Shown in pieces: positions 2,713 to 61,789 of a DNA stretch of 64,000 bases (positions within the stretch are counted from its first letter, which is position 1; each line of letters begins with the position of its first letter). The DNA lies in assembly GCF_001194135.2 (NCBI RefSeq), contig NC_069003.1, positions 21,418,722-21,482,721 on the forward strand, in the 5' to 3' direction. The notes under the pieces were generated by a model. It was not told the DNA's origin and searched no databases. It saw only the letters and a program-made list of their open reading frames with translations. Position numbers and translations under genes: made by a program. Source of the DNA: Octopus bimaculoides. Taxonomy: Eukaryota.

Positions 2713-4259
2713 TATTGGCTCATCCCATAAATAATGCAGAACGAAAAGTCAAAGGGGGACAGGATAAACTACCTCCATCAACTTCCTATAAAAGCAGGTA
2801 GTAATTTTACCTTATCCTTATTCTTAGTGCAAGTTTTGAAGAGTGCAATTCGATTTTAACAGTTGTTTTGTCAAGGCTATATTGGAAGTGACAAAGAAGC
2901 ATATTCAGCATATTTTGCATTATGAGTTCAGTAAAGGCAACAATGGCAACAGAAAGTGCAAGGAACATTAATACAGTATATGGGGATCAGAAAATAAGCG
3001 TAAGCCAATGTCAATGGTGGTTGCAGAAATTCCAAGCTGGAAACTACAGCCTAGAAGACCAGCCTCGTCCTGGAAGATCTGTAGAGCTCGATGAGGATGT
3101 CCTGTGAACTCTGGTGGAACAAAATCCCATCATAACTGTTGAGGAACTAGCAGAGAAGCTTAGATTTGGTCATTCAACCATTCATCGACACCTGCGTGCA
3201 TTTGGAAAAGTCAGAAAATTGGGTCAATGGGTTCCTCACAAACTTTCCAAGTCTAATCACACACACAGAGTGAATGTGTGCTCTTCTTTGCTGTCATGTC
3301 TCACGAATGAACTCTTTTTGGACCGAACAGTGAAATGGATTCTCTATAAAAATGTCAAGTGGTGAAGACAGTGGGTAGAGAAAGGNNNNNNNNNNNNNNN
3401 NNNNNNNNNNNNNNNNNNNNNNNNNNNNNNNNNNNNNNNNNNNNNNNNNNNNNNNNNNNNNNNNNNNNNNNNNNNNNNNNNNNNNNNNNNNNNNNNNNNN
3501 NNNNNNNNNNNNNNNNNNNNNNNNNNNNNNNNNNNNNNNNNNNNNNNNNNNNNNNNNNNNNNNNNNNNNNNNNNNNNNNNNNNNNNNNNNNNNNNNNNNN
3601 NNNNNNNNNNNNNNNNNNNNNNNNNNNNNNNNNNNNNNNNNNNNNNNNNNNNNNNNNNNNNNNNNNNNNNNNNNNNNNNNNNNNNNNNNNNNNNNNNNNN
3701 NNNNNNNNNNNNNNNNNNNNNNNNNNNNNNNNNNNNNNNNNNNNNNNNNNNNNNNNNNNNNNNNNNNNNNNNNNNNNNNNNNNNNNNNNNNNNNNNNNNN
3801 NNNNNNNNNNNNNNNNNNNNNNNNNNNNNNNNNNNNNNNNNNNNNNNNNNNNNNNNNNNNNNNNNNNNNNNNNNNNNNNNNNNNNNNNNNNNNNNNNNNN
3901 NNNNNNNNNNNNNNNNNNNNNNNNNNNNNNNNNNNNNNNNNNNNNNNNNNNNTGCTCCACACACCATATTCGCCAGACATTTCTCCATTTGATTATCATT
4001 TATTCCGTTGTTTTCAAAATCATGTGGTATGAAAAAAATATGAATTCTGTAGTTGAGGTCAGAACAATACTGGAGGAGTATTTTACATCACGGACAAGGG
4101 AATTTTGGAAGAGGGGCCTTACAAGTCTACAAGATAGATGGAAGAGCATTGTAGAAAATGAAGGAGAGTATAATTTAGATTAAAAAAAGAAATTTATCTT
4201 AATTTTGAAAAATAAAAGAAGTATAAAAAAAACTGCATCATTTATGGGATGATCCAATA
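2713..4259 (+). mobile_element. Mariner DNA transposon, full length but decayed
   Basis: TA TSD (2713-2714, 4258-4259); 25-bp TIRs ttggctcatcccataaataatgcag (2715-2739) and ctgcatcatttatgggatgatccaa (4233-4257), 2 mismatches; central N-gap 3386-3952. Confidence 0.95.
2880..4183 (+). pseudogene. Mariner transposase pseudogene
   Basis: Mariner motifs WVPHKL and PYSPDISPFDYHLF, HTH region, C-terminal DRWKSIVENEGEY; in-frame stops and frameshifts. Confidence 0.92.
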
Positions 4260-7589: not shown

Positions 7590-8260
7590 CATGCAAATTC
7601 TGATCTTCGGTCATAGCCAAAGGCAGCTCTGAAGGCATCAGAATGTGAGACGAGTACTATTGATGTGTATGTTGATCTGAGGTATTTGAAATGGTTAACT
7701 TCTTTAAGGACCTCGCTGTTGAGAACCATTGACACCTTTTCCAAGAATAGGATCCCTGCCATGAGAACTTTGGTTTTGGATGCATTTTATCTTAATATCG
7801 ATTTTGAGAACCCAGGAGTTGATTTTGTTGGTAGCAGTTTGGAGGTCAGCATAGTTGTCTCCTAGGACCACTATATTGTCAGCATAGTAAAAGTTGATGG
7901 AGACAAAATTCAATCCCACCCTAATACCAGGAAACTCTGCCAGCACAGGTTTCATGATCCAGTTAATGGATAACACATAGCTATGTTGAACCCCAGAACA
8001 GACATCAGAAAACGGTGATTTTTGTCTATACCCAGATCTTTCAAACCCCAAAATATGACAACACTACTGCATCAATACTCTGCAAGTTCTACTTACAAGA
8101 CGTCTACGGCAGCTTAGCCATACTTTCCATCAGTCTCCAGGAGAGTTCATTCACAAAGTGGTCAACTCAACACACCCACTAGACTGGCACAAACGAGCTG
8201 AAGGACAACTGAAGACATGACTGGTAACAGTAAAGGCAGATGAGCCACCACATCTATGGT
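7590..8260 (-). mobile_element. RTE-clade LINE reverse transcriptase remnant
   Basis: SGVQHSYVLS (cf. GVRQGCVLS), YADNIVVL (YADD), EVNHFKYL; stops and frameshifts. Confidence 0.85.
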
Positions 8261-8831: not shown

Positions 8832-8991
8832 CAGGCTTCTTTCAATTTCCATTTGCCAAATTCATTTACAAGACTGGTTGGGTTGGAATATTAGTAAAAT
8901 ACATTTTCCCAAGAAGCCACACATTGGGATTGAACCTAGAACGAAGTGGTTGAGAAGTAAGCTTGTTAACCACAAAGCTATGCTTGTACCT
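8832..8991 (-). mobile_element. SINE family 1 head
   Basis: Diverged reverse complement of the 10836 consensus head. Confidence 0.7.
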
Positions 8992-9439
8992 GCAATCTGA
9001 TGGAAATTGGACTGCTAATGCTAGCAGGTCAAGTGACAATGTAGACCTTTGTTCAGTGTGGCACAATGAGGCAAGAAGCTAACAACATGACTGGAAGGCA
9101 AAGAATGATGTTGTAAAGGAAATAATTAAGTGAGAAACAAGACAAATTAACAGGAGAATAATTCCACGGATGGGAAGAAGGTTTGGAGACAATATGGATG
9201 GGTTAGAGAGAGGGGGAATGTGTCAAGGGAGGGGAGACAGAAGAAATAAAAGATGTCATGGAGGGAGTGAAGAAGAGGATGAACAAGGAGTTCATTAACT
9301 GGTTTATGATGTAAATAACCATGTCTTTCGTTTAAGAAGATAATTACTAATACAAGACAAATAGTTAAGACATGATTGGAGCAGATAATTGTTATTATTT
9401 TCACAGGGCAAATAAGTGAGTTACATGACTAAATATATA

Positions 9440-9849: not shown

Positions 9850-10074
9850 GGTGGTGGTGGTGGAGCTGTTTTAGCCCCAGATCAGCTTTCATCACACATA
9901 TTTATGATCAAAGTCATTCTAATAGTGACTACTCTACCCAGACAGTATGTCTACACAGGGAATCAATTTGTCTCAGGAGATTTACAGGTCTGCATTTGAA
10001 AAGTTTCTCCCCAAGTTCCAAGCCTGTATTCCTGACTCTCCTACCTGTGCCACCATGTTCTCCAAAGGAAAAGC

Positions 10075-15455: not shown

Positions 15456-16185
15456 AGAAAATGGCCTGTGAGCTTCTGCATAATCCAGTTTCACTCAAGG
15501 CAATGGCTGAACCAAGGTGAGAGAAGAAAATCCCCATGCTCAAGCTGCCACATGGTTACATTGAACCTAGAACCAAGTGATTACAAGTGAATCTCTTAAC
15601 AATGCCTACACACCGATGACGACGAAGAGGATGAGGAGGAAGTGGAGGAGGTGGTGAAATTGAGGAGGCGGTGAAATGGAGGAGGCAGTGAACAAAATAA
15701 AATGATAAATGAATCAATAAATTAACACACTTGTTTTTAAACGAGATGACGGAGTTGAATGGGTCAGTGATCAGAGGAGAATAATTGGATTGCTAAGTGG
15801 ATCATAGATAAAAGTACACACACACAATACATACATATATATACATATATACATACATACACACACACGTACATACATACATGTGTGTATATGTATGTAT
15901 ATATGTATTAATATCTATGAAAGAAAGAAAATGGAATTCACGAGACTCTTTACATTATTCACAACAATTGTTTCAACCCATTGTGCACCTTGCCTCACTG
16001 GTGCATCACAGGTACAGATGTGTCTTGTCAGGTGACTTGTCAAAAGGTACCTCATTTTTTAATCTCCATTTCACTTATTTCTATTACAATACATTGTGGT
16101 GGTAGTAGTAGTAGTAGTAGTACTAGTAGTACAAGGTGTACACCCAAGTATAAAATTATTAATATCTATATACACATATATGTAT

Positions 16186-20452: not shown

Positions 20453-20914
20453 TTGATGTCACTGTGTGTCTGAGTAGTGTTGAAGCAATAGTAACAATAA
20501 CAATAATTAGGATGATGATGATGATGATAATCTAATCAGCTAATCTATTATAAAGAGGCTTAATGCTAATGCAATGATTTCATGGTTGGACCAACACACA
20601 CACACACACACGATCAATGGAGATTTACATATACATCCACATTTTAGAGAAACAGTGCTAATAATACACATGTTTCTTTGTTTTGCAACCCATAGTTATA
20701 TGCACACACACACATATATATATACACACATGCAAGTAAAAATACATGATGACACACACACACACACACATACATATATATACATATATATACATGCAAG
20801 TAAAAATACACTGTCACAAACACACACACATAATTATAGTATTAAGATAGCAGTAGCTTCTAGAAGTCCACAGCTCCTCCTGACAAGAAACAACAGCAAC
20901 AACAACAATTTGAT

Positions 20915-21410
20915 TCAAGTAGGAAGTCTCTCTGTTGTCTTTGAGCTTACTAGAAATAGCAGCCAAACTTCACATCACAATTCGCTGTTTTTTAAAAGCT
21001 GACCACTTATAGATAATGTGGTCTTAGACATTTTAAAAAGAGATAGAGAAAGAGAGGATGGCCATGGTTGGAGTCTATGACCATAGGTCTTCACAGTCAG
21101 GATTGACCTGGGGTTAACGAGCACCAGCAAGCAAAGATGTAGCAGCAGTGACAACAATCACCATGAGTCAGTGAGGGTGCCTCTACATGGCCACTTGTTT
21201 GGCTAGAAATAGCAACTAAATCTTCCTCAACACACACCTTACTGCTTTTAGAGAAATAAAAACACATGAAATAATGTGGCCCTGACATCTCTACAGACTG
21301 CAGGGGTAAAAAAAAAAATGGAGAAAAAGACTGGTCATGGCTGTTCTGGATCAGTTCAGTTGGGGTTGATCTCCGGATAAGCAACAGCAAGAACAAGAAC
21401 AGCAACTATC
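20915..21410 (+). mobile_element. Two tandem copies of a (CAA)n-tailed short element with a structured 5' end
   Basis: Copies at 20915-21140 and 21162-21410; shared gctagaaatagcagccaaatc head, gacacattggataatgt-like middle and gacctgggg(c/t)taa+(CAA)n tail. Confidence 0.75.
21162..21228 (+). ncRNA. Candidate HDV-like ribozyme fold (P1.1 not found)
   Basis: Order P1a CAUGAGU, P2a GAGGG, P3a GCC, L3 UCUACAU, P3b GGC, P1b ACUUGUU, P4 GCUA-GAAA-UAGC, J4/2 CUAAA, P2b CUUCCUC. Confidence 0.35.
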
Positions 21411-21640
21411 ATAAGAGAACACCACCGACACCACCACCACCACCAAGAGCAACAACAGTAACAAGCTTATCAACAATGCTAAAAACTGATTAGAAAACAA
21501 CAACAATAAACGAGATGTTTAAAGCTATTTATTGATTTGCAAATTAAGGGGATCAATGCCAATTAGGAGAGATAAACGAGTGAGAAGGGAAATAAATCAA
21601 CACAATTCCAAAAGTTATTCATAATATACATGGATTGAAG

Positions 21641-21680: not shown

Positions 21681-21717
21681 ATATATGTATGTATGTATAT
21701 ATATGTGTATGTGTGTG

Positions 21718-21815
<98 letters not shown>

Positions 21816-21960
21816 TAGATATATGTATGTATATATGGATATATATATATGTATGTATATATGGTTATATATATATATGTATATATATGGATATATATGT
21901 ATGTATGTATATATATGTATGCATGTGTATATATGTATGTACATATATGGGCATGTTTAA
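21641..21960. repeat. Compound (TG)n/(TA)n/(GATA)n microsatellite
   Basis: Direct reading. Confidence 0.95.
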
Positions 21961-22561
21961 ATGCACATATACACACACACATATTCATGCAAAAACAAAT
22001 ACACACACAAACACATGTATACATACAGACACATCTACACACAGAAAACACAGAAGTACATATTCACACACACACATAGAAACAACCGGAATTGTGGAGG
22101 AGTAGATTTTTCTACTTCAATGCAAATGTTTTGTAGCTTGTTTTTAAACTGATTGATTGATTAACAATGTTGCTATTGCTGTTGTAGTGTTGTTCCTTCT
22201 TTCCTTTTCATCCATGAGTCACCCAGGGTTTTAATATAAGGTATGCCACACCCTTGTGGGACTTAAGAGGCAGACTAAAAGGTTTTAGTGACAGGAAGGA
22301 TGGTAGCCAACCATAGAGCACTGCACCATGACGAATAAAATGAAAGATTGTTGGAGTGTGATGGAGGGGGGAGGGTCCTGGTCACTACAACTCTAACCTA
22401 CCCACACCCCACACACTTCAGCAAAGGGGTGCAGGGAGCCCTTAAAACTGTTTGTTTGTTTTAGCATTTTTTTTTTTTTTTTTTTTTTTTGGTTGTGACA
22501 TTAGAGTGGAGAAATGGTTGAGGTGAGTGGGGAGGTAGTTTTAAATATCATTTCATCAGAG

Positions 22562-25094: not shown

Positions 25095-25135
25095 NNNNNN
25101 NNNNNNNNNNNNNNNNNNNNNNNNNNNNNNNNNNN

Positions 25136-25197
<62 letters not shown>

Positions 25198-25314
25198 TAC
25201 ATATATATACACATGTTAAACGATGATGATAATGACACTCATTATTATATTAGGGAATGTATACAAATGCACACACTTACTCATCACAAACATATGACTG
25301 AGTAACTGCCTACC

Positions 25315-27149: not shown

Positions 27150-27560
27150 GTAGTTACGGTTGATTAACTTCAAGTCAACCCTGACTGAACAGACTTATGA
27201 TCAAAGAAATTCTCACTGAGACAACTATCTCATCTTTTATTCAGCCGATGTGTGTGTGTGTGTGTTTGTGTGTAGGAATGACTACATTTACTCTTGATGT
27301 GTCCTGTTTTATAAGAAGTTACAGAGCTTTATCTTAACAAGATTTCGCTACTATTTCTAGCAGAGAGGCACCTTCGTTAGTGGACGTCATTGCAGTTGAT
27401 TAGTCTCAGGTCAATTCTGATTAAACAGACTTACGATCAAAGATGTTCCACCACAGTGAAACCCAACCCTTCTTTTACTCAGGCATAGTGTATATCGGAC
27501 TACATTATCTAATGTGTCATCTCACGTTTAAGGTGAGTCAGATACTGCTGTTGTTTCTAA
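27150..27560 (-). mobile_element. Two tandem diverged copies of the (CAA)n-tailed element
   Basis: Repeated gttgatta..ggtcaa..cagactta.gatcaaag unit; ctgctagaaatagtagcgaaatc head on the minus strand near 27345. Confidence 0.6.
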
Positions 27561-27741
27561 CTCGTTGGTTTGGCCGCATAGGGGCCAACCAGAAGATGTA
27601 AGTTTGATTTTGCACCAGGCTCTGCTTGTCTTTCATTATCTTGATTAAAATATATTGTGAGTGATTGAAGCAGTGTGAGAGTGATGTGGGTGAGTGGGTA
27701 AGGGTGGGAAATGTAATTGAGTGAGTAAGCGAATGTGTGTG

Positions 27742-31249: not shown

Positions 31250-31640
31250 CAACAGTACTGATAATGAATCAGTAGTCACTGAGACAGCTAAAAATAGCTG
31301 CTAAATCTCTCTCAAATCACACCCTACTTCTGATGTATAAAGTGACACATTGGTTACAGTTGAAGTGCATTCAATTATAAAAACGTCAACTTGGTGAAGG
31401 CTGATCTTGGTTAAACCACAAAATATGGATGGACATACACACCCAGTTTTCACAAAACTCATTCATTCATTTGTTCATACATACATATATACATCCATCC
31501 ATCCATACAATCATTTATTTGGGCACTTATCATAGAATATGACAGGCTATATGTTTAAAATAGGGCTGCAGCACCTCAGATCTCTGATCATGGGTCTGCT
31601 TGGCCTGGAATGATCTGAGATGGGCTTGGGCTATACAACA
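31250..31640 (+). mobile_element. (CAA)n-tailed element, interrupted
   Basis: cagctaaaaatagctg ctaaatctctctc head (31285-31313); tail gatcatgggtctgct...gggcttggggctatacaacaa. Confidence 0.6.
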
Positions 31641-32009
31641 ATGATAATTTATGAGGGTTAATTTCATAGGTGAACTTTTACTGGCTTATAAATGGACAAT
31701 AACAACAAGAGCACTCAGAGAGTGTAAACCTCTGCCATGGCAACATCAGTGTCCTCTCAACGATTAGCTGGAGATGATTTTTAAAATAAGAATATTTGAA
31801 ATAAACTCAACTGCTCTCACAAACAAGAATACTAAAAGTGAACCTGGCTGCTCTCGGCAGTGAAGTGAAAGCACGCTATAAAATTAAAACTACTGAATAA
31901 TAATAATGCTGATAATGATGATGATAATTACCTATCCTGTTTGTACATCAGAAATTATGCTAGCATAATAACAACCAACATAAACTATGTTGCATAAACA
32001 AAAGTACCA

Positions 32010-38993: not shown

Positions 38994-38999
38994 CACATA

Positions 39000-39219
39000 G
39001 TTGCTCAGCCCTTGGTCAGCAGCTTTGACTGAGTAAAATCTATGATCATAGACAGTCTAACCATGCCACTCCAGTTGTTCAGTTTCAGCTAGTTTATATA
39101 CCAAGCTCTCGTTATCCAATAGAGATTTCATTTTTTAAAAATATGACAAGGTATATTTAGAGGGAGATTTGGCTGCTATTTTTAGCAAGGACAAGCAAAA
39201 ATTCCCTCAATGACATGCC
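39000..39219 (-). mobile_element. (CAA)n-tailed element with HDV-like head (P3/L3 deleted)
   Basis: Minus strand: P1 GGCAUGU/GCUUGUC, P2 GAGGGA/UCCCUC, P4 UUGCUA-AAAA-UAGCAG, J4/2 CCAAA. Confidence 0.65.
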
Positions 39220-39551: not shown

Positions 39552-39770
39552 GTATGTGTTTGTGTGTCTGTGTTTGTCTCCCAACATCGCTTGACAACTG
39601 ATGCTAGTGTGTCTACGTCCCCATAACTTAGCGGTTCAGCAAAAGAGACCGATAGAATAAGCACTAGGCTTACAAAGAATAAGTCCTGGGGTCAATCTGC
39701 TCGACTAAAGGTGGTGCTCCAGCATGGCCACAGTCAAATGACTGAAACAAGTAAAAGAGAGTAAAGAGTA
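39349..39770 (+). mobile_element. SINE family 1, young, inserted in a plus-strand copy of the (CAA)n-tailed element (39240-39860)
   Basis: Nearly identical to 10836-11241. Confidence 0.9.
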
Positions 39771-39965
39771 GGTCTGAAAAGTTATGTTGGGCACGGCTGG
39801 CACAAGTTTGATCATAGATCTATACAATTAAGGCTGACTTGGGGCTAAGCATCAACAACAGTATCACACATATTTGTGTCTTCTTCATTTGTATGACCAC
39901 CCTGTGCTTAAGAGGACTGGTTTGTATTCTCTAGTGAAAATCCCAAATCAAGTACAGACTGTTTG

Positions 39966-40184: not shown

Positions 40185-40555
40185 GGAAGTCACCAAGGGT
40201 CAATTTGGTGATCCCATGGAGTAGGAAAGAATTAGATTTATATTGCAACATCATCACACAACAACGGGCCTCCCCTCCTCTTTCTATCAGTTCCATCCTT
40301 CTGGTTAGGTTGGGAAACAGTTATCCAGGATTAGAAACTGAAAGTCAAAGAGGGAGCTGCTATGTGGTCACATGATCTACTAGAACTAGCAGGCAAATCT
40401 CCTTCCCTCCCCACTCCAAAAATATGGAAGGACATAATGTAATCCAGGACAAAAGCTGATTATAGATAATCAAATTAAACAAAAAAAATGAAAATCTTAC
40501 ATGCCTAATATTATATCCCCTTTTCTTATACATAAATAAATATACATGTGTGTAT

Positions 40556-48262: not shown

Positions 48263-48749
48263 GTGGTTGTTAGAAGTGGAAGTAATACATCGAGATATCA
48301 AGGAATCTATGAACAAAAGAGAAACCTGAAGCCCAATTCTTGTAACAAAGAAGGCTTTGCTAAAAGTAGTGGTGGTGGTGGTGGTGGTGGTGGTGGTAGT
48401 GATGATGGGAGAATGGTGATGATGGTGGTGACAGTAGTGGTGGTGGTGGTGATAGTTAACCCTGGTTAAGAATCAGATTTACCATTACCAATATATATAT
48501 ATATGTTATTGATCCCTGCAAGAATGATGAAGAATACAAAGTGACCTTCATCACAGCGGAATACTATCCCATAATGCTATTGATTCTCTCTGCATCTTGT
48601 CTGCCAGTAATCCATAAATAATCTTCCTCTACATCCTGACCAACCAGACTAGCATTAGAAACAGTCTTGATAATGACTTTTTATTAATTATATTTACCAA
48701 TAACTCGTTATCTACAAGATTGCATTACAACACAAATAACAGCAAGCAC

Positions 48750-48940
48750 AAGTCAACCAAAGAGCTTCTACACGCACCCTTGATTTGCTAGAAATAGCAA
48801 TCATATGCTCGAAAAATCATATCTATTATCCTAAAAGAAAAAGACAAATCCTCTCTGGAAAGACAGGAGGGTCATGGTTAGAATGTCTTTGATTATAAAT
48901 TTGCTCAGCCAGGGTGGATCTTTGGTTGAACATACAGCAC
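48750..48940 (+). mobile_element. (CAA)n-tailed element
   Basis: ttgcta-gaaa-tagcaa hairpin (48785-48800) and ggtcatggttagaatgtctttgatt tail. Confidence 0.6.
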
Positions 48941-49208
48941 GAGTTAACCAAAATCTGCCTTAAACAAGATTCCTGTTGTCTTATAGCAAAAAAAGATGAG
49001 CACATTAGTTAAAATAGTCCTAGATATATTTAAGCGGATGGCATGGATGGTTATGATAGGAATACCTTCAGTCATGGTTGACCCAGGGTTAAACATTAAC
49101 ATCATCAACCTCAACAAGAGTAAAAACAGAATTCCAAGCAGGAAAATCACACCAACATTTTTACAGCTTAGGTTTGCTATTTCCATACTGGGGTACATGC
49201 ACATACAG

Positions 49209-53378: not shown

Positions 53379-53504
53379 AAAGTAAGACAGAGTATCTGTT
53401 GAATTCGATACCTTTTGCCATAATGTATGTGAAACACAGTGCTCAACTGACCTGCTAGAAATAGCAGTAGAGTTTGGATTAGATGTTGCATCTTTATTTT
53501 TTAT

Positions 53505-53850: not shown

Positions 53851-54425
53851 TACCACATAGCCATGCCTGGAAAACAAATCGGGGTTGTATTTTTCTTTTT
53901 TTTTGCTTTTTTTAAAATTAAATTCCTGTTTCATAGACTGAAAATTTCATTTTACAAATTTTCTTTCCACCACACTTCTGTAACCTTTTCCATTTTGATG
54001 AGAGATGTAAGGACTGCTCATCCCAAACTCAGCTGAAATGGTGACCAAATCTTCCTCAAGTCACATGTTTCCATCTTAATAAAATAATCCCTGCCAAACA
54101 AATAGACATTATCTAATGCAGAATTAGATTTAATATTTCCCAAATAATATAACTAGGCAGGGATAGGCATTGCTGGAGTGGCTTTGATGGTAAGGTATGT
54201 TGGATCAGGGATGATCTGGGCATACAACAACAAGTAATTCATTATTGCCATTGGACTGCATCAAATACCAGCAACATACTGGGGTTTATAATCCTGGCAT
54301 GATATGAAACTATTATATGTATGCATGCAGCACAACATGAAGGCAACTAGAGAGCCTTGGTACGCTGGCCTCTGGAAACTGGGATAGCATCTGATCTTGG
54401 AAACAAGACCAAAACTACACAGTAC

Positions 54426-60879: not shown

Positions 60880-61332
60880 CTAAGGCGGCGAGCTGGCAGA
60901 AACGTTAGCACACCAGGCAAAATGCCTAGTGGTATTTCGTCTGCTGTTACGTTCTGAGTTCAAATTCCACCGAGGTTGACTTTGCCTTTCATCCTTTCAG
61001 GGTCGATAAATTAAGTACCAGTTACACACTGGGGTCGATATAATCGACTTAATCCATTTGTCCTTGTTTGTCCCCTCTGTGTGTAGCCCCTTGCAGGCAG
61101 TAAAGAAATAAGAAACGTTAGCACGCTGGGCGAAATGCCTAGCGATATTTTGTCTGCCATTATGTTCTGAGTTCAAATTCCACCAAGGTTGACTTTGCCT
61201 TTCATCCTTTGAGGGTCGATTAAATAAGTACCAGTTAATCACTGGGGTCGATGTAATCGACTTAATCCCCTTGTCTGTCCTTGTTTGTCACCTCCATGTT
61301 TAGCCCTCTGTGGGCAATAAAGAAATAAAAAT
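60880..61332 (+). mobile_element. SINE family 2 head-to-tail dimer inside a single 11-bp TSD
   Basis: TSD tatgtccttgc at 60869-60879 and 61333-61343; the second unit starts at gaaacgttagc (~61111). Confidence 0.9.
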
Positions 61333-61789
61333 TATGTCCTTGCTTCTTTTTCTTATGAAAGCTGTAGTCTGTGGATTTTAAGGTAATTTAGTTGCTATTT
61401 CTAGCAGTGGCTGACTCCCTTGTTACCTAATACACTAACAATACTTACAAATATATTTATCTTACAAGGTTTCAATCTCGAGTCAGTTTTGTCAGGTTTC
61501 TATCATATTAATGTCACGCTACTCTTCGGAGATAAAACAGCTTATAACTAGTTAAACAGATTAAAGAATCTTTTGCAAGAGGGAAAAAAAAAAATTACTA
61601 GATATATTTGAATATAAAACAAACCACAAAAAATAGATCTTTGAAATATTATTATTATCATCATAATCATCATCTTTAGGTATTATTATTACTATCATAA
61701 TTATCATTACTACTACTACTACTACTACTACTACCATCTTTAGGTATCATCATCATCATCATTACTATTACTACTGCTGCTCCTCCAAC

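What the first reader, a model, noticed from the sequence alone, without database searches (positions are those of the whole stretch)
21162..21228. HDV-like ribozyme architecture at the 5' end of an abundant (CAA)n-tailed short retroelement
Seen: the helix order P1a-P2a-P3a-L3-P3b-P1b-P4-J4/2-P2b matches the HDV fold. P3 is GCC/GGC, and L3 is UCUAC(A/G)U. P4 covaries between copies: CUGCUA-GAAA-UAGCAG (53452), UUGCUA-GAAA-UAGCAA (48785), CAGCUA-AAAA-UAGCUG (31285). J4/2 reads C-N-A-A-A in six copies (CCAAA, CUAAA, CGAAA), like C75-G76-A77-A78 of HDV. P1 and P2 pair in the minus copy at 39160-39219, which starts with G. Known: HDV-like ribozymes define the 5' ends of R2, R4, RTE and L1Tc elements and of SIDE non-autonomous elements. 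Against: I find no purine pair for P1.1 between P1b and P4. Inference: a ribozyme-headed, tRNA-less SINE/SIDE family, possibly with a variant fold.
Basis: partly seen in the sequence, partly recalled or inferred. Interest (0 to 1): 0.72.

Follow-up and report, generated by a model that had tools for sequence, protein, structure and literature searches.

The report
Possible ribozyme-headed octopus short retroelement
A very common ~300-base mobile element of octopus genomes begins with a conserved folded RNA module that can be drawn as an HDV-like self-cleaving ribozyme, but the copies at hand are too few and too decayed to prove it, and several hallmarks of that ribozyme class are missing.

Summary
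The sequence is as described. Window 21163-21228 is the 5' end of one copy ("B") of an abundant, tRNA-less, (CAA)n-tailed short retroelement, with about 12 heads and 11 3' domains in 64 kb. The family also occurs at orthologous sites in Octopus vulgaris, O. sinensis and O. bimaculoides, so it is old.

**For the ribozyme reading**
- Copy B and the family consensus thread onto the HDV-like nested double pseudoknot. Only 1-4% of shuffled controls do so under a relaxed descriptor.
- Homology between copies begins at the first base of P1.
- After CpG correction, L3 reads UCUACGU. This has the U, C, C and G of the published HDV-like descriptor in the right positions.
- P1 becomes CGAGU/ACU(C/U)G.
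- A conserved C-N-A-A-A-U follows P4.

**Against it**
- No copy passes a canonical descriptor.
- There is no G1 and no G-C P1.1.
- One extra base separates P3 from P1', and J4/2 is 6-7 nt long.
- No Rfam ribozyme model matches.
- Only P4 shows covariation. P1-P3 do not (13-18 decayed copies).
- Copy B itself carries inactivating-type changes.

**Verdict:** a credible but unproven HDV-like 5' ribozyme, about 50% likely. If real, it is a new member of a known kind, like Dong, R2-SIDE and NARTc.

The parts
21163..21168 (+). P1 5' strand (ATGAGT) and first bases of element copy B. The CpG-corrected family form is ACGAGT.
   Evidence: Descriptor search. Homology among 14 copies starts at this A. 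CG/TG/CA census at this site.
21169..21172 (+). J1/2 (CAGT; family consensus CAAC)
21173..21179 (+). P2 5' strand GAGGGTG (consensus GAGGGAG). The last G is shared with P3.
   Evidence: Consensus is perfectly complementary to CTCCCTC. 62-68% of cells are paired in decayed copies, with no covariation.
21179..21191 (+). P3 GCC/GGC enclosing L3 TCTACAT (ancestral TCTACGT; the G has decayed to A in this copy)
   Evidence: An ortholog pair differs here: TACAC in O. vulgaris, TACGC in O. bimaculoides.
21192..21199 (+). One spacer C, then the P1 3' strand ACTTGT (21193-21198), then a 1-nt J1/4
   Evidence: Family consensus (T)CACTTGA(T/C).
21200..21215 (+). P4 hairpin with GAAA loop (consensus CTGCTA-GAAA-TAGCAG). 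This copy has a G.A mismatch.
   Evidence: 12-mer core found 13 times against 3.9 expected. Covariation.
21216..21221 (+). J4/2-like CTAAAT (family C-N-A-A-A-T), the best-conserved unpaired block. The first C is the candidate catalytic cytosine.
   Evidence: column counts
21222..21228 (+). P2 3' strand CTTCCTC (consensus CTCCCTC)
21229..21332 (+). Poorly conserved body of copy B
21333..21389 (+). Conserved 3' domain of copy B (family consensus GGTCATGGTTAGAATGTCTTTGATCATAGGTCTGTTCAGTCAGGGTTGACCTGGGGTTAA)
   Evidence: nhmmer
21390..21508 (+). CAA/CCA-rich tail of copy B
20910..21161 (+). Copy A, head-to-tail directly upstream of B. Head 20910-20981, 3' domain 21060-21126, tail up to 21161.
48747..48939 (+). 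Copy F: head 48747-48823, 3' domain 48870-48939. A 5'-truncated copy follows at 49040-49096.
38999..39219 (-). Copy E: P2 and P4 intact, P3/L3 deleted
27157..27386 (-). Copy C: interior of the head deleted. It is preceded by another 3' domain at 27391-27452.
31263..31641 (+). Copy D: head lacks P2a-L3, and the body carries an insertion
40339..40415 (+). Copy I: head only
53997..54232 (+). Copy G: degenerate head and 3' domain
61370..61432 (-). Copy H: head, with the body interrupted by a tRNA-type SINE
8989..9065 (-). Weak, degenerate head (24 bits)
9861..9930 (-). 5'-truncated copy: 3' domain plus a long (CCA)n(CAA)n tail
39788..39857 (+). 5'-truncated copy (3' domain only)

Best explanation
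**What it is.** The finding is the 5' end of one old, now inactive copy of an abundant, octopus-specific, non-autonomous non-LTR retroelement of about 250-350 bp.
- Shown: the family has a defined 5' end, a conserved 3' domain with a (CAA)n-type tail, 5'-truncated copies and head-to-tail pairs.
- Inferred: it is copied by a partner LINE that recognises the 3' domain and tail.

**The 5' module.** The first ~66 nt of the family's source genes most likely encoded an HDV-like self-cleaving ribozyme:
- P1 (A)CGAGU/ACU(C/U)G, starting at the element's first base
- J1/2 CAAC
- P2 GAGGGAG/CUCCCUC
- P3 GCC/GG(U/C)
- L3 UCUACGU
- P4 CUGCUA-GAAA-UAGCAG
- J4/2 C-N-A-A-A-U, whose first C would be the general acid

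**How it would work (inferred).** The element has no recognisable pol III head. It would be transcribed as part of longer host or tandem-array transcripts. The ribozyme would cut immediately 5' of the element, giving a unit-length RNA with a defined 5' end. In tandem arrays the same cut releases the upstream unit just after its CAA tail. The unit-length RNA would then be reverse-transcribed at the target.

**This copy.** The copy at 21163-21228 has lost the L3 G and both P1 CpGs, and it has a mismatch in P4. It is probably dead.
For: **Topology**
- Copy B shows the full helix order under a relaxed descriptor (null 3.7%).
- So do the plain consensus (null 0.6-1%) and the CpG-corrected consensus (null 1.5-1.7%).

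**5' end**
- Homology among 14 copies begins at the first base of P1 (A in 11/14). Upstream columns are at background.

**CpG decay**
- Leader, J1/2-P2 and L3 sites show CG/TG/CA mixtures.
- Orthologs of O. vulgaris and O. bimaculoides differ by CG against CA or TG.
- Restoring the CpGs gives L3 UCUACGU and turns one or both of B's P1 wobbles into Watson-Crick pairs (the second depends on the less certain P1' CpG; see evidence against). The published descriptor fixes U19, C20, C21, C23 and G24 in a 7-nt L3, and C-R-R-A in J4/2 (PMC6326823). This element has U1, C2, C5, G6 and C-N-A-A-A.

**Pairing counts**
- On the MAFFT alignment the HDV-like structure pairs 68.1% of cells against 64.4 +/- 1.4 in shuffles (5/500 reach it). 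It has 30 double-change cells against 19.7 (3/500).
- An alternative P1 shows no excess.
- Each copy's 5'-terminal 8 nt pairs better with its own pre-P4 segment than with those of other copies. This gives p=0.003, chosen post hoc; with the whole leader p=0.088.
- P4 covaries.
- The J4/2 AAA-U is the most conserved unpaired block.

**Context**
- No tRNA-like head.
- Precedent: Dong, R4, R2, RTE, L1Tc/NARTc and R2-SIDEs carry active 5' HDV-like ribozymes (PMC3774820, PMC3414825, PMC3383444).
- Dong-R4 is the most numerous recently active LINE group in O. vulgaris (PMC13282606).
Against: - No copy and no consensus passes a canonical or near-canonical descriptor (P1>=5-6, P3' abutting P1', P3 of 3 bp, J4/2 3-6 nt).
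- +1 is A or C, not G. There is no G.Y closing pair.
- J1/4 is 0-2 nt (AU) without G, so P1.1 is at best one U-A pair. PMC6326823 calls the P1.1 pseudoknot pairing required to form the catalytic centre.
- One spacer base separates P3' from P1'.
- J4/2 is 6-7 nt. The position after the C is usually a pyrimidine.
- P1 is only 5 bp in the consensus.
- No Rfam ribozyme family matches, at gathering or at E<=10.
- With orthologs removed, P1 covariation is not significant: p=0.09 in 13 copies and 0.25 in 18. P2 and P3 show none.
- The CpG at the P1' site is weakly supported (about TG 9 : CA 2 : CG 1).
- A nested alternative exists in which UUG of the P1' region pairs with CAA of J4/2.
- The relaxed descriptor was widened after seeing the sequence.
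Confidence: 0.5

Rival explanations
1. The 5' module is a conserved, structured but non-catalytic RNA or DNA element. Candidates are a binding or packaging site for the partner LINE's protein, a 5'-UTR remnant of that LINE, or part of an internal promoter. On this reading the HDV-like drawing is a coincidence built on two real helices (P4, and probably P2).
For: - Only P4 is supported by covariation.
- P2 and P3 are merely sequence-conserved.
- Hallmarks of the class (G1, G-C P1.1, direct P3'/P1' abutment) are absent.
- No Rfam model matches.
- The consensus MFE fold is a simple nested three-way junction: P2, a 2-bp P3 and an extended P4 (-19.3 kcal/mol, z=-2.9).
- The leader contains TCAGT/TCAAC, which is initiator-like (from my own knowledge, not tested).
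Against: - It does not explain why the 7-nt loop next to P2 carries U, C, C and G exactly where the HDV-like descriptor fixes them.
- It does not explain why a C followed by AAA sits right after P4.
- It does not explain why the pre-P4 segment is complementary to the very first bases of the element.
- An internal promoter starting at TCA would not copy the conserved upstream A(C/T)GAG.
Confidence: 0.33
2. Apart from a hairpin there is no functional 5' structure. The head is just the conserved 5' sequence of an old repeat family, and all long-range pairings are chance complementarity found by looking hard.
For: - RNAalifold finds only 4 bp of P4.
- Column-shuffle controls are not exceeded for P1-P3 in independent copies.
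- Copy B's own MFE is not unusual (z=-1.0).
- Many alternative P1 registers could be drawn by eye.
Against: - The consensus has a perfect 7-bp P2 and a 6-bp GNRA-capped P4 with compensatory variants.
- The relaxed HDV threading is reached by only 0.6-4% of shuffles.
- The head region is at least as conserved as the 3' domain across subfamilies.
Confidence: 0.17

Closest known systems
Dong (Bombyx mori, R4 clade): 5' HDV-like ribozyme of a microsatellite-inserting LINE (PMC3774820)
   Same: - A retroelement flanked by a simple trinucleotide repeat.
- The ribozyme sits at the extreme 5' end and cuts at the repeat/element junction.
- Dong-R4 LINEs are abundant and recently active in Octopus (PMC13282606).
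- The printed Dong 5' end (GCTCCCTAAAATCCTACC) resembles the octopus CTCCCTCAAATCACACC block in 14/17 positions. This is unexplained.
   Different: - Dong is autonomous. Its ribozyme spans up to about 300 nt and has been shown to cleave.
- The octopus element is non-coding, and its candidate ribozyme is 66 nt and untested.
- Only about 5 of 18 heads have a CAA-rich 5' flank, so strict microsatellite targeting is not shown.
- The similar block lies in P2', not at the 5' end.
R2 SIDEs (short internally deleted elements) and R2 ribozymes (PMC3414825, PMC3774820)
   Same: - Non-autonomous element made of a 5' ribozyme plus a 3' protein-recognition end.
- Relies on co-transcription.
- R2 ribozymes tolerate J1/4 of 0-2 nt, mismatches in P1 and P2, and even a 4-bp P1.
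   Different: - R2 and its SIDEs sit in 28S rDNA at low copy number and derive visibly from a known LINE.
- Here the element is dispersed, extremely abundant, and no parent LINE has been identified.
L1Tc / NARTc Pr77-L1TcRz of Trypanosoma cruzi (PMC3383444, PMC3185411)
   Same: A non-autonomous, SINE-like derivative (NARTc) that shares with its LINE a ~77-nt 5' module which is an HDV-like ribozyme. The copy is dispersed and abundant.
   Different: - That module is also a proven internal promoter.
- It comes from a different phylum and LINE clade, with no sequence similarity.
CPEB3 ribozyme and the published HDV-like descriptor (PMC6326823, PMC4836649)
   Same: - Same helix order.
- GC-rich 3-bp P3.
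- 7-nt L3 with U at position 1 and C-G at positions 5-6.
- C at the start of an A-rich J4/2.
   Different: - No G1.Y pair and no C-G P1.1.
- L3 position 3 is U, not C.
- One extra base between P3' and P1'.
- J4/2 is longer by 2-3 nt.
- The Rfam models for these families do not score it.

Membership tests
HDV-like self-cleaving ribozyme | Nested double-pseudoknot order P1-P2-P3-L3-P3'-P1'-P4-J4/2-P2' | tested here: met
   Found in copy B and in the plain and CpG-corrected consensus. Shuffles reach it in 0.6-4% of cases. It is absent from 13 of 16 individual heads, which carry deletions or decay.
HDV-like self-cleaving ribozyme | P1 of about 6-7 bp that starts at the cleavage site and whose 3' strand lies immediately downstream of P3/L3 (PMC3774820) | tested here: inconclusive
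   - P1 starts at the element's first base.
- It is 6 bp with 2 G.U in B, and 5 bp (7 positions with one A.A) in the consensus.
- One spacer base follows P3'.
- The strict and near-strict descriptors fail.
HDV-like self-cleaving ribozyme | G at +1 paired with a pyrimidine (G1-Y; PMC6326823) | tested here: not met
   +1 is A in 11/14 copies. The first pair is A-U (B) or C-G (consensus).
HDV-like self-cleaving ribozyme | P3 of 3 bp directly after P2, closing a ~7-nt L3 with conserved U(1), C(5) and G(6). The U.G reverse wobble is crucial for catalysis (PMC6326823, PMC3774820). | tested here: met
   - P3 is GCC/GG(C/U).
- L3 is TCTACAT in B. TCAACGT and TCTACGC occur in copies that keep the CpG, and TATGT or TACAT elsewhere.
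- This is met only for the CpG-corrected ancestor. Copy B has A at position 6, the same kind of change that abolished cleavage in Nasonia R2 (PMC3774820).
HDV-like self-cleaving ribozyme | P1.1: two C-G pairs between L3 positions 2-3 and J1/4 (PMC6326823) | tested here: not met
   - L3 positions 2-3 are C and U.
- J1/4 is AU or AC in the consensus and U(UG) in B, so at best one U-A pair forms.
- R2 ribozymes with J1/4 of 0-2 nt exist (PMC3774820).
HDV-like self-cleaving ribozyme | Catalytic C as the first base of J4/2, followed by R-R-A (PMC6326823) | tested here: inconclusive
   C is present in 12/18 copies. It is followed by N (mostly C or T), then A-A-A-T in 16-17 of 18. The C and the As are there, but there is one extra base and J4/2 is 6-7 nt.
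HDV-like self-cleaving ribozyme | P2 of at least 5 bp | tested here: met
   GAGGGAG/CTCCCTC, 7 bp in the consensus. 62-68% of cells are paired in the copies.
HDV-like self-cleaving ribozyme | Match to curated covariance models (Rfam HDV, CPEB3, drz families) | tested here: not met
   No hit at gathering score in the window. None at E<=10 in 20800-21600. None among the 150 best of the window-wide E<=10 scan.
HDV-like self-cleaving ribozyme | Compensatory covariation in P1, P2 and P3 | tested here: inconclusive
   - Whole structure: 5/500 and 3/500 shuffles reach the observed values when ortholog pairs are included.
- Independent copies: P1 p=0.09 and 0.25.
- P2 and P3 show none.
- Copies decay neutrally after insertion, so the test has little power.
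HDV-like self-cleaving ribozyme | Site-specific self-cleavage | not testable with these tools
   Needs an in-vitro transcription and cleavage assay.
SIDE-type non-autonomous LINE derivative | 5' and 3' ends shared with an identified autonomous LINE | tested here: inconclusive
   - No LINE carrying the head or the 3' domain was found in the 64 kb window or the three ~24 kb octopus loci.
- The only adjacent LINE piece is an unrelated RTE fragment with a (GATA)n tail and its own TSD.
- Protein searches for LINE handles found nothing usable.
Classical SINE (tRNA-, 7SL- or 5S-derived head with pol III boxes) | tRNA, 7SL or 5S-related 5' head | tested here: not met
   ARAGORN finds no tRNA-like sequence in the window. 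No Rfam tRNA, 7SL or 5S hit.
LINE-mobilised retroelement | Conserved 3' end plus simple-repeat tail, 5'-truncated copies, dispersed insertions | tested here: met
   - 11 3' domains in the window, several without heads (9861-9930, 39788-39857, 49040-49096).
- CAA/CCA-rich tails.
- Copies at orthologous sites in three Octopus species.

The most novel reading that the evidence does not exclude
An octopod-specific repeat family, present perhaps in hundreds of thousands of copies, is headed by a working variant of the HDV-like ribozyme. This variant does without G1 and without a G-C P1.1, and it tolerates an extra base between P3 and P1. It would cut unit-length retrotransposition templates out of host or tandem-array transcripts. 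That would be both a structurally new sub-type of the fold and the most abundant ribozyme-bearing element known in a mollusc. It would also seed self-cleaving motifs throughout cephalopod introns and UTRs.
Probability: 0.3. Interest if true: 0.7.

Novelty: new member of a known kind. Interest (0 to 1): 0.5.

Why it matters
If the head cleaves, a large share of the still 'unclassified' SINEs of octopus genomes would gain a mechanism. SINEs make up 11.6% of O. vulgaris, with 893 unclassified families among the recently active insertions (PMC13282606). The mechanism would be co-transcription followed by ribozyme processing, as in Dong, R2-SIDEs and NARTc, and it would hold at very high copy number. 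Thousands of octopus transcripts would then carry potential self-cleavage sites. The fold would also show how far P1.1 and G1 can be dispensed with. If the head does not cleave, it remains a well-defined conserved 5' RNA module of an abundant cephalopod repeat whose partner LINE is still to be found.

Tried and rejected
**Searches that led nowhere**
1. The metagenome scan for the head motif gave 3 chance hits without the rest of the element.
2. Protein routes to more octopus DNA mostly failed.
   - The window's RT fragment has no close relative.
   - An RTE fragment gave only short contigs.
   - Ten window ORFs are not on record.
   - Only the rhodopsin locus of three Octopus species was obtained. 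One decapodiform locus has no copy.

**Readings tested and rejected**
3. RTE as partner: the RTE piece in L004 is an independent insertion with a (GATA)n tail and its own TSD.
4. Alternative P1 GTCAA/TTGAT: it fits the consensus but shows no covariation and needs a 3-4 nt spacer.
5. Strict (CAA)n target specificity: only about 5 of 18 heads have a CAA-rich 5' flank, although head-to-tail pairs are frequent.
6. My by-eye 'compensatory' P2 changes: most are register shifts and vanish in column-wise counts.
7. Circularly permuted unit (3' domain first): isolated copies start at the same A(T/C)GA as tail-preceded ones.
8. Hammerhead, twister, pistol or hatchet: no Rfam match.

**Left out on purpose**
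9. I did not write out a letter-by-letter comparison with the HDV ribozymes themselves, because HDV is a virus of people. I used the published descriptor (PMC6326823) and non-viral relatives instead.
Full report
**What the window is**

The window is AT-rich eukaryotic DNA with N gaps, many microsatellites and dispersed repeats. That retrieved the rhodopsin cluster of Octopus and its loci in three species:
- O. vulgaris (L004)
- O. bimaculoides (L005)
- O. sinensis (L006)

All three loci contain the repeat family of the finding, partly at orthologous positions. The window therefore comes from an Octopus-like genome. The family predates the vulgaris/bimaculoides split. A decapodiform rhodopsin locus (L008) has no copy in 21 kb.

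**The element**

Profile searches find 10 heads and 11 3' domains in the 64 kb. A covariance model raises this to about 18 independent heads in the window plus the octopus loci.

A full copy is about 250-350 bp and has four parts:
- a ~77-nt conserved head
- a poorly conserved body of ~60-110 nt
- a ~65-nt conserved 3' domain (GGTCATGGTTAGAATGTCTTTGATCATAGGTCTGTTCAGTCAGGGTTGACCTGGGGTTAA)
- a CAA/CCA-rich tail

Several other features fit a LINE-mobilised, non-autonomous element:
- Some 3' domains lack a head. These look like 5'-truncated copies.
- Several head-to-tail pairs occur: A and B at 20910-21508, one pair at 27150-27700 on the minus strand, F plus the copy at 49040, and one pair in L005.
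- ARAGORN finds no tRNA-like sequence, and Rfam finds no 7SL, 5S or tRNA.

No partner LINE was found. The RTE fragment next to one copy in L004 is an independent insertion with a (GATA)n tail and its own target-site duplication. Only about 5 of 18 heads have a CAA-rich 5' flank. A preference for inserting at existing tails is therefore likely, but strict microsatellite targeting is not shown.

**Checking the observation**

A descriptor search that I wrote threads copy B as follows:

| Part | Sequence | Coordinates |
|---|---|---|
| P1 | ATGAGT / ACTTGT | 21163-21168 / 21193-21198 |
| J1/2 | CAGT | 21169-21172 |
| P2 | GAGGGT(G) / (ATCTTC or CTTCCTC) | 5' strand 21173-21179 |
| P3 | GCC / GGC | 21179-21181 / 21189-21191 |
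| L3 | TCTACAT | 21182-21188 |
| spacer | C | 21192 |
| J1/4 | 1 nt | 21199 |
| P4 | TGGCTA-GAAA-TAGCAA | 21200-21215 |
| J4/2 | CTAA(AT) | from 21216 |

Only 3.7% of shuffles of the upstream part allow any such threading. The same search finds a solution in just one other independent copy. It finds none under canonical settings (P1 of at least 6 bp, P3' abutting P1', P3 of 3 bp).

The heads differ a great deal:
- The P3/L3 13-mer is unique in the window.
- Copies C, D, E, G and H have lost the P3/L3 or P1' segment by deletion.

**Consensus and CpG decay**

The aligned heads give this consensus:

A-ATGAGT-CAAC-GAGGGAG-CC-TCTACAT-GG-T-C-ACTTGA-T-CTGCTA-GAAA-TAGCAG-CCAAAT-CTCCCTC-AAATCACACC

Three sites show the CG/TG/CA mixture typical of decayed CpGs:
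- the leader, A[CG]AGT
- the J1/2-P2 junction, CAA[CG]AGG
- L3, TCTA[CG]T

Orthologous copies differ in just this way. One pair reads TACAC in O. vulgaris and TACGC in O. bimaculoides. Another reads CTTGAT against CTCGAT. The CpG at the P1' site is weaker, at about TG 9: CA 2: CG 1.

With CpGs restored, P1 becomes (A)CGAGU/ACU(C/U)G. Copy B's two G.U wobbles lie at the two proposed decayed CpGs, the second being the less certain P1' site. L3 becomes UCUACGU.

The published HDV-like descriptor fixes the following (PMC6326823):
- G1-Y
- U19, C20, C21, C23 and G24 in a 7-nt L3
- two C-G pairs in P1.1
- C-R-R-A in J4/2

The octopus module has the U, the first C, the C-G pair of L3 positions 5-6, the C after P4 and the As. 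It lacks G1, the second L3 C and the J1/4 Gs.

The plain and CpG-corrected consensuses pass my relaxed descriptor, which 0.6-1.7% of shuffles reach. They fail the strict and near-strict ones. The failures come from the spacer base and from the shared G, which makes either P3 2 bp or J4/2 7 nt.

**5' end**

I anchored 14 copies on the first base of P1. Conservation starts at that base (A in 11/14) and is at background upstream of it. This supports the model. The first base is A rather than G.

**Covariation**

*MAFFT alignment, 16 rows including three ortholog pairs.* The HDV-like structure pairs 68.1% of cells, against 64.4 +/- 1.4 in shuffles (5/500 reach it). It has 30 double-change cells against 19.7 (3/500). 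Five of the six P1 pairs show changes on both sides. The tool warns that related sequences can reach such values without any structure.

*Orthologs removed, 13 rows.*
- P4 is significant (p about 0.007).
- P1 is not (p=0.09).
- P2 and P3 show no covariation.

*Model-based alignment, 18 copies.* P1 gives p=0.25 and P4 gives p=0.03.

*Other tests.*
- RNAalifold predicts only the P4 core.
- A register-free test asks whether each copy's 5' leader pairs better with its own pre-P4 segment than with those of other copies. It gives p=0.088 for the whole leader. It gives p=0.003 for the 5'-terminal 8 nt, a choice made after seeing the data.
- A rival P1 (GTCAA/TTGAT) shows no excess at all.

Individual repeat copies decay neutrally after insertion. 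These tests therefore have little power either way. Only subfamily consensuses from a whole genome can settle the question.

**Database checks**

- No Rfam family reaches its gathering score in the window.
- No ribozyme family appears at E<=10 around the finding.
- None appears among the 150 best hits of the window-wide permissive scan. That scan is dominated by microsatellite false positives.
- The literature library holds no paper combining HDV-like ribozymes and octopus.

**Comparison with known systems**

Active HDV-like ribozymes mark the 5' ends of R2, R4, Dong, RTE, baggins and L1Tc (PMC3774820). They also mark the non-autonomous R2-SIDEs (PMC3414825) and NARTc (PMC3383444).

Dong is the closest analogy. 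It is a LINE embedded in a trinucleotide repeat whose ribozyme cuts at the repeat/element junction.

R2 ribozymes show how elastic the fold is (PMC3774820):
- P1 is usually 6-7 bp, but 4 bp in the jewel wasp element.
- J1/4 ranges from 0 to 2 nt.
- P1 and P2 tolerate mismatches.
- P4 is dispensable.

The same paper stresses that P1' lies immediately after P3/L3. It also reports that a G-to-A change in L3 killed one ribozyme, and that is the state of copy B.

**Verdict**

Confidence differs by claim:
- 'Ribozyme-headed, tRNA-less retroelement' is a coherent and biologically well-precedented reading. I put it at about 50%.
- Membership of the HDV-like class fails three descriptor features (G1, a G-C P1.1, and model match). 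Catalysis is untested.
- The main rival is a structured but non-catalytic 5' module, at about one third.
- A small remainder is that only the P4 hairpin is meaningful.
- The specific copy at 21163-21228 is almost certainly inactive today.

Noticed in passing
window 21222-21238 (and the same block in all heads): The block CTCCCTCAAATCACACC (P2 3' strand plus downstream) matches 14 of 17 positions of the 5' end of Bombyx mori Dong, as printed in a primer in PMC3774820 (GCTCCCTAAAATCCTACC). In Dong those bases are the very 5' end. Here they lie about 60 nt inside the element.
   Followed up: no
L004 23229-23590: A 5'-truncated RTE-clade LINE fragment (C-terminal RLAYFGHVMRR...GRGRPRTRWLD motif) with a (GATA)n tail and the target-site duplication ATGTCTAAAG. 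It is inserted inside a copy of the family.
   Followed up: partly
window 20910-21508; 27150-27700 (-); 48747-49096; L005 10363-10755 (-): Head-to-tail pairs of the element occur, with new copies sitting in or right after the CAA-rich tail of an older one. Yet most heads (13/18) have no CAA-rich 5' flank.
   Followed up: partly
window 53448-53467: An isolated 20-nt copy of TGACCTGCTAGAAATAGCAG (pre-P4 bases plus the P4 hairpin), with nothing else of the element around it.
   Followed up: no
window 3990-4183 (+): C-terminal remnant of a mariner-type transposase (...REFWKRGLTSLQDRWKSIVENEGEYNLD), next to an N gap.
   Followed up: no
window 7704-8051 (-): A degenerate reverse-transcriptase fragment (FYYADNIVVLGDNYADL). 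It has no close relative in either protein collection (best 42% identity, E 1e-6).
   Followed up: partly
window ~61100-61330 (-), ~39600-39750 (+): Copies of a different, tRNA-type octopus SINE (…GGGCTAAACATGGAGG…AAGTCGATTACATCGACCCCAGTG…). One of them interrupts copy H of the family.
   Followed up: no
window, e.g. 25135-25215, 15835-15915, 21690-21990: (TG)n/(TA)n microsatellites give about 190 sub-threshold Rfam 'mir-297/mir-466/mir-3149' matches in the permissive scan. All are far below gathering score and are false positives.
   Followed up: yes
3' domains, e.g. window 21060-21126, 39068-38999 (-): The 3' domain contains a near-perfect palindrome, CTATGA(T/C)CATAG (CTTTGATCATAA in other copies), and a second hairpin, CAGG-GTTGA-CCTG. 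These are possible recognition stem-loops for the unknown partner LINE.
   Followed up: no
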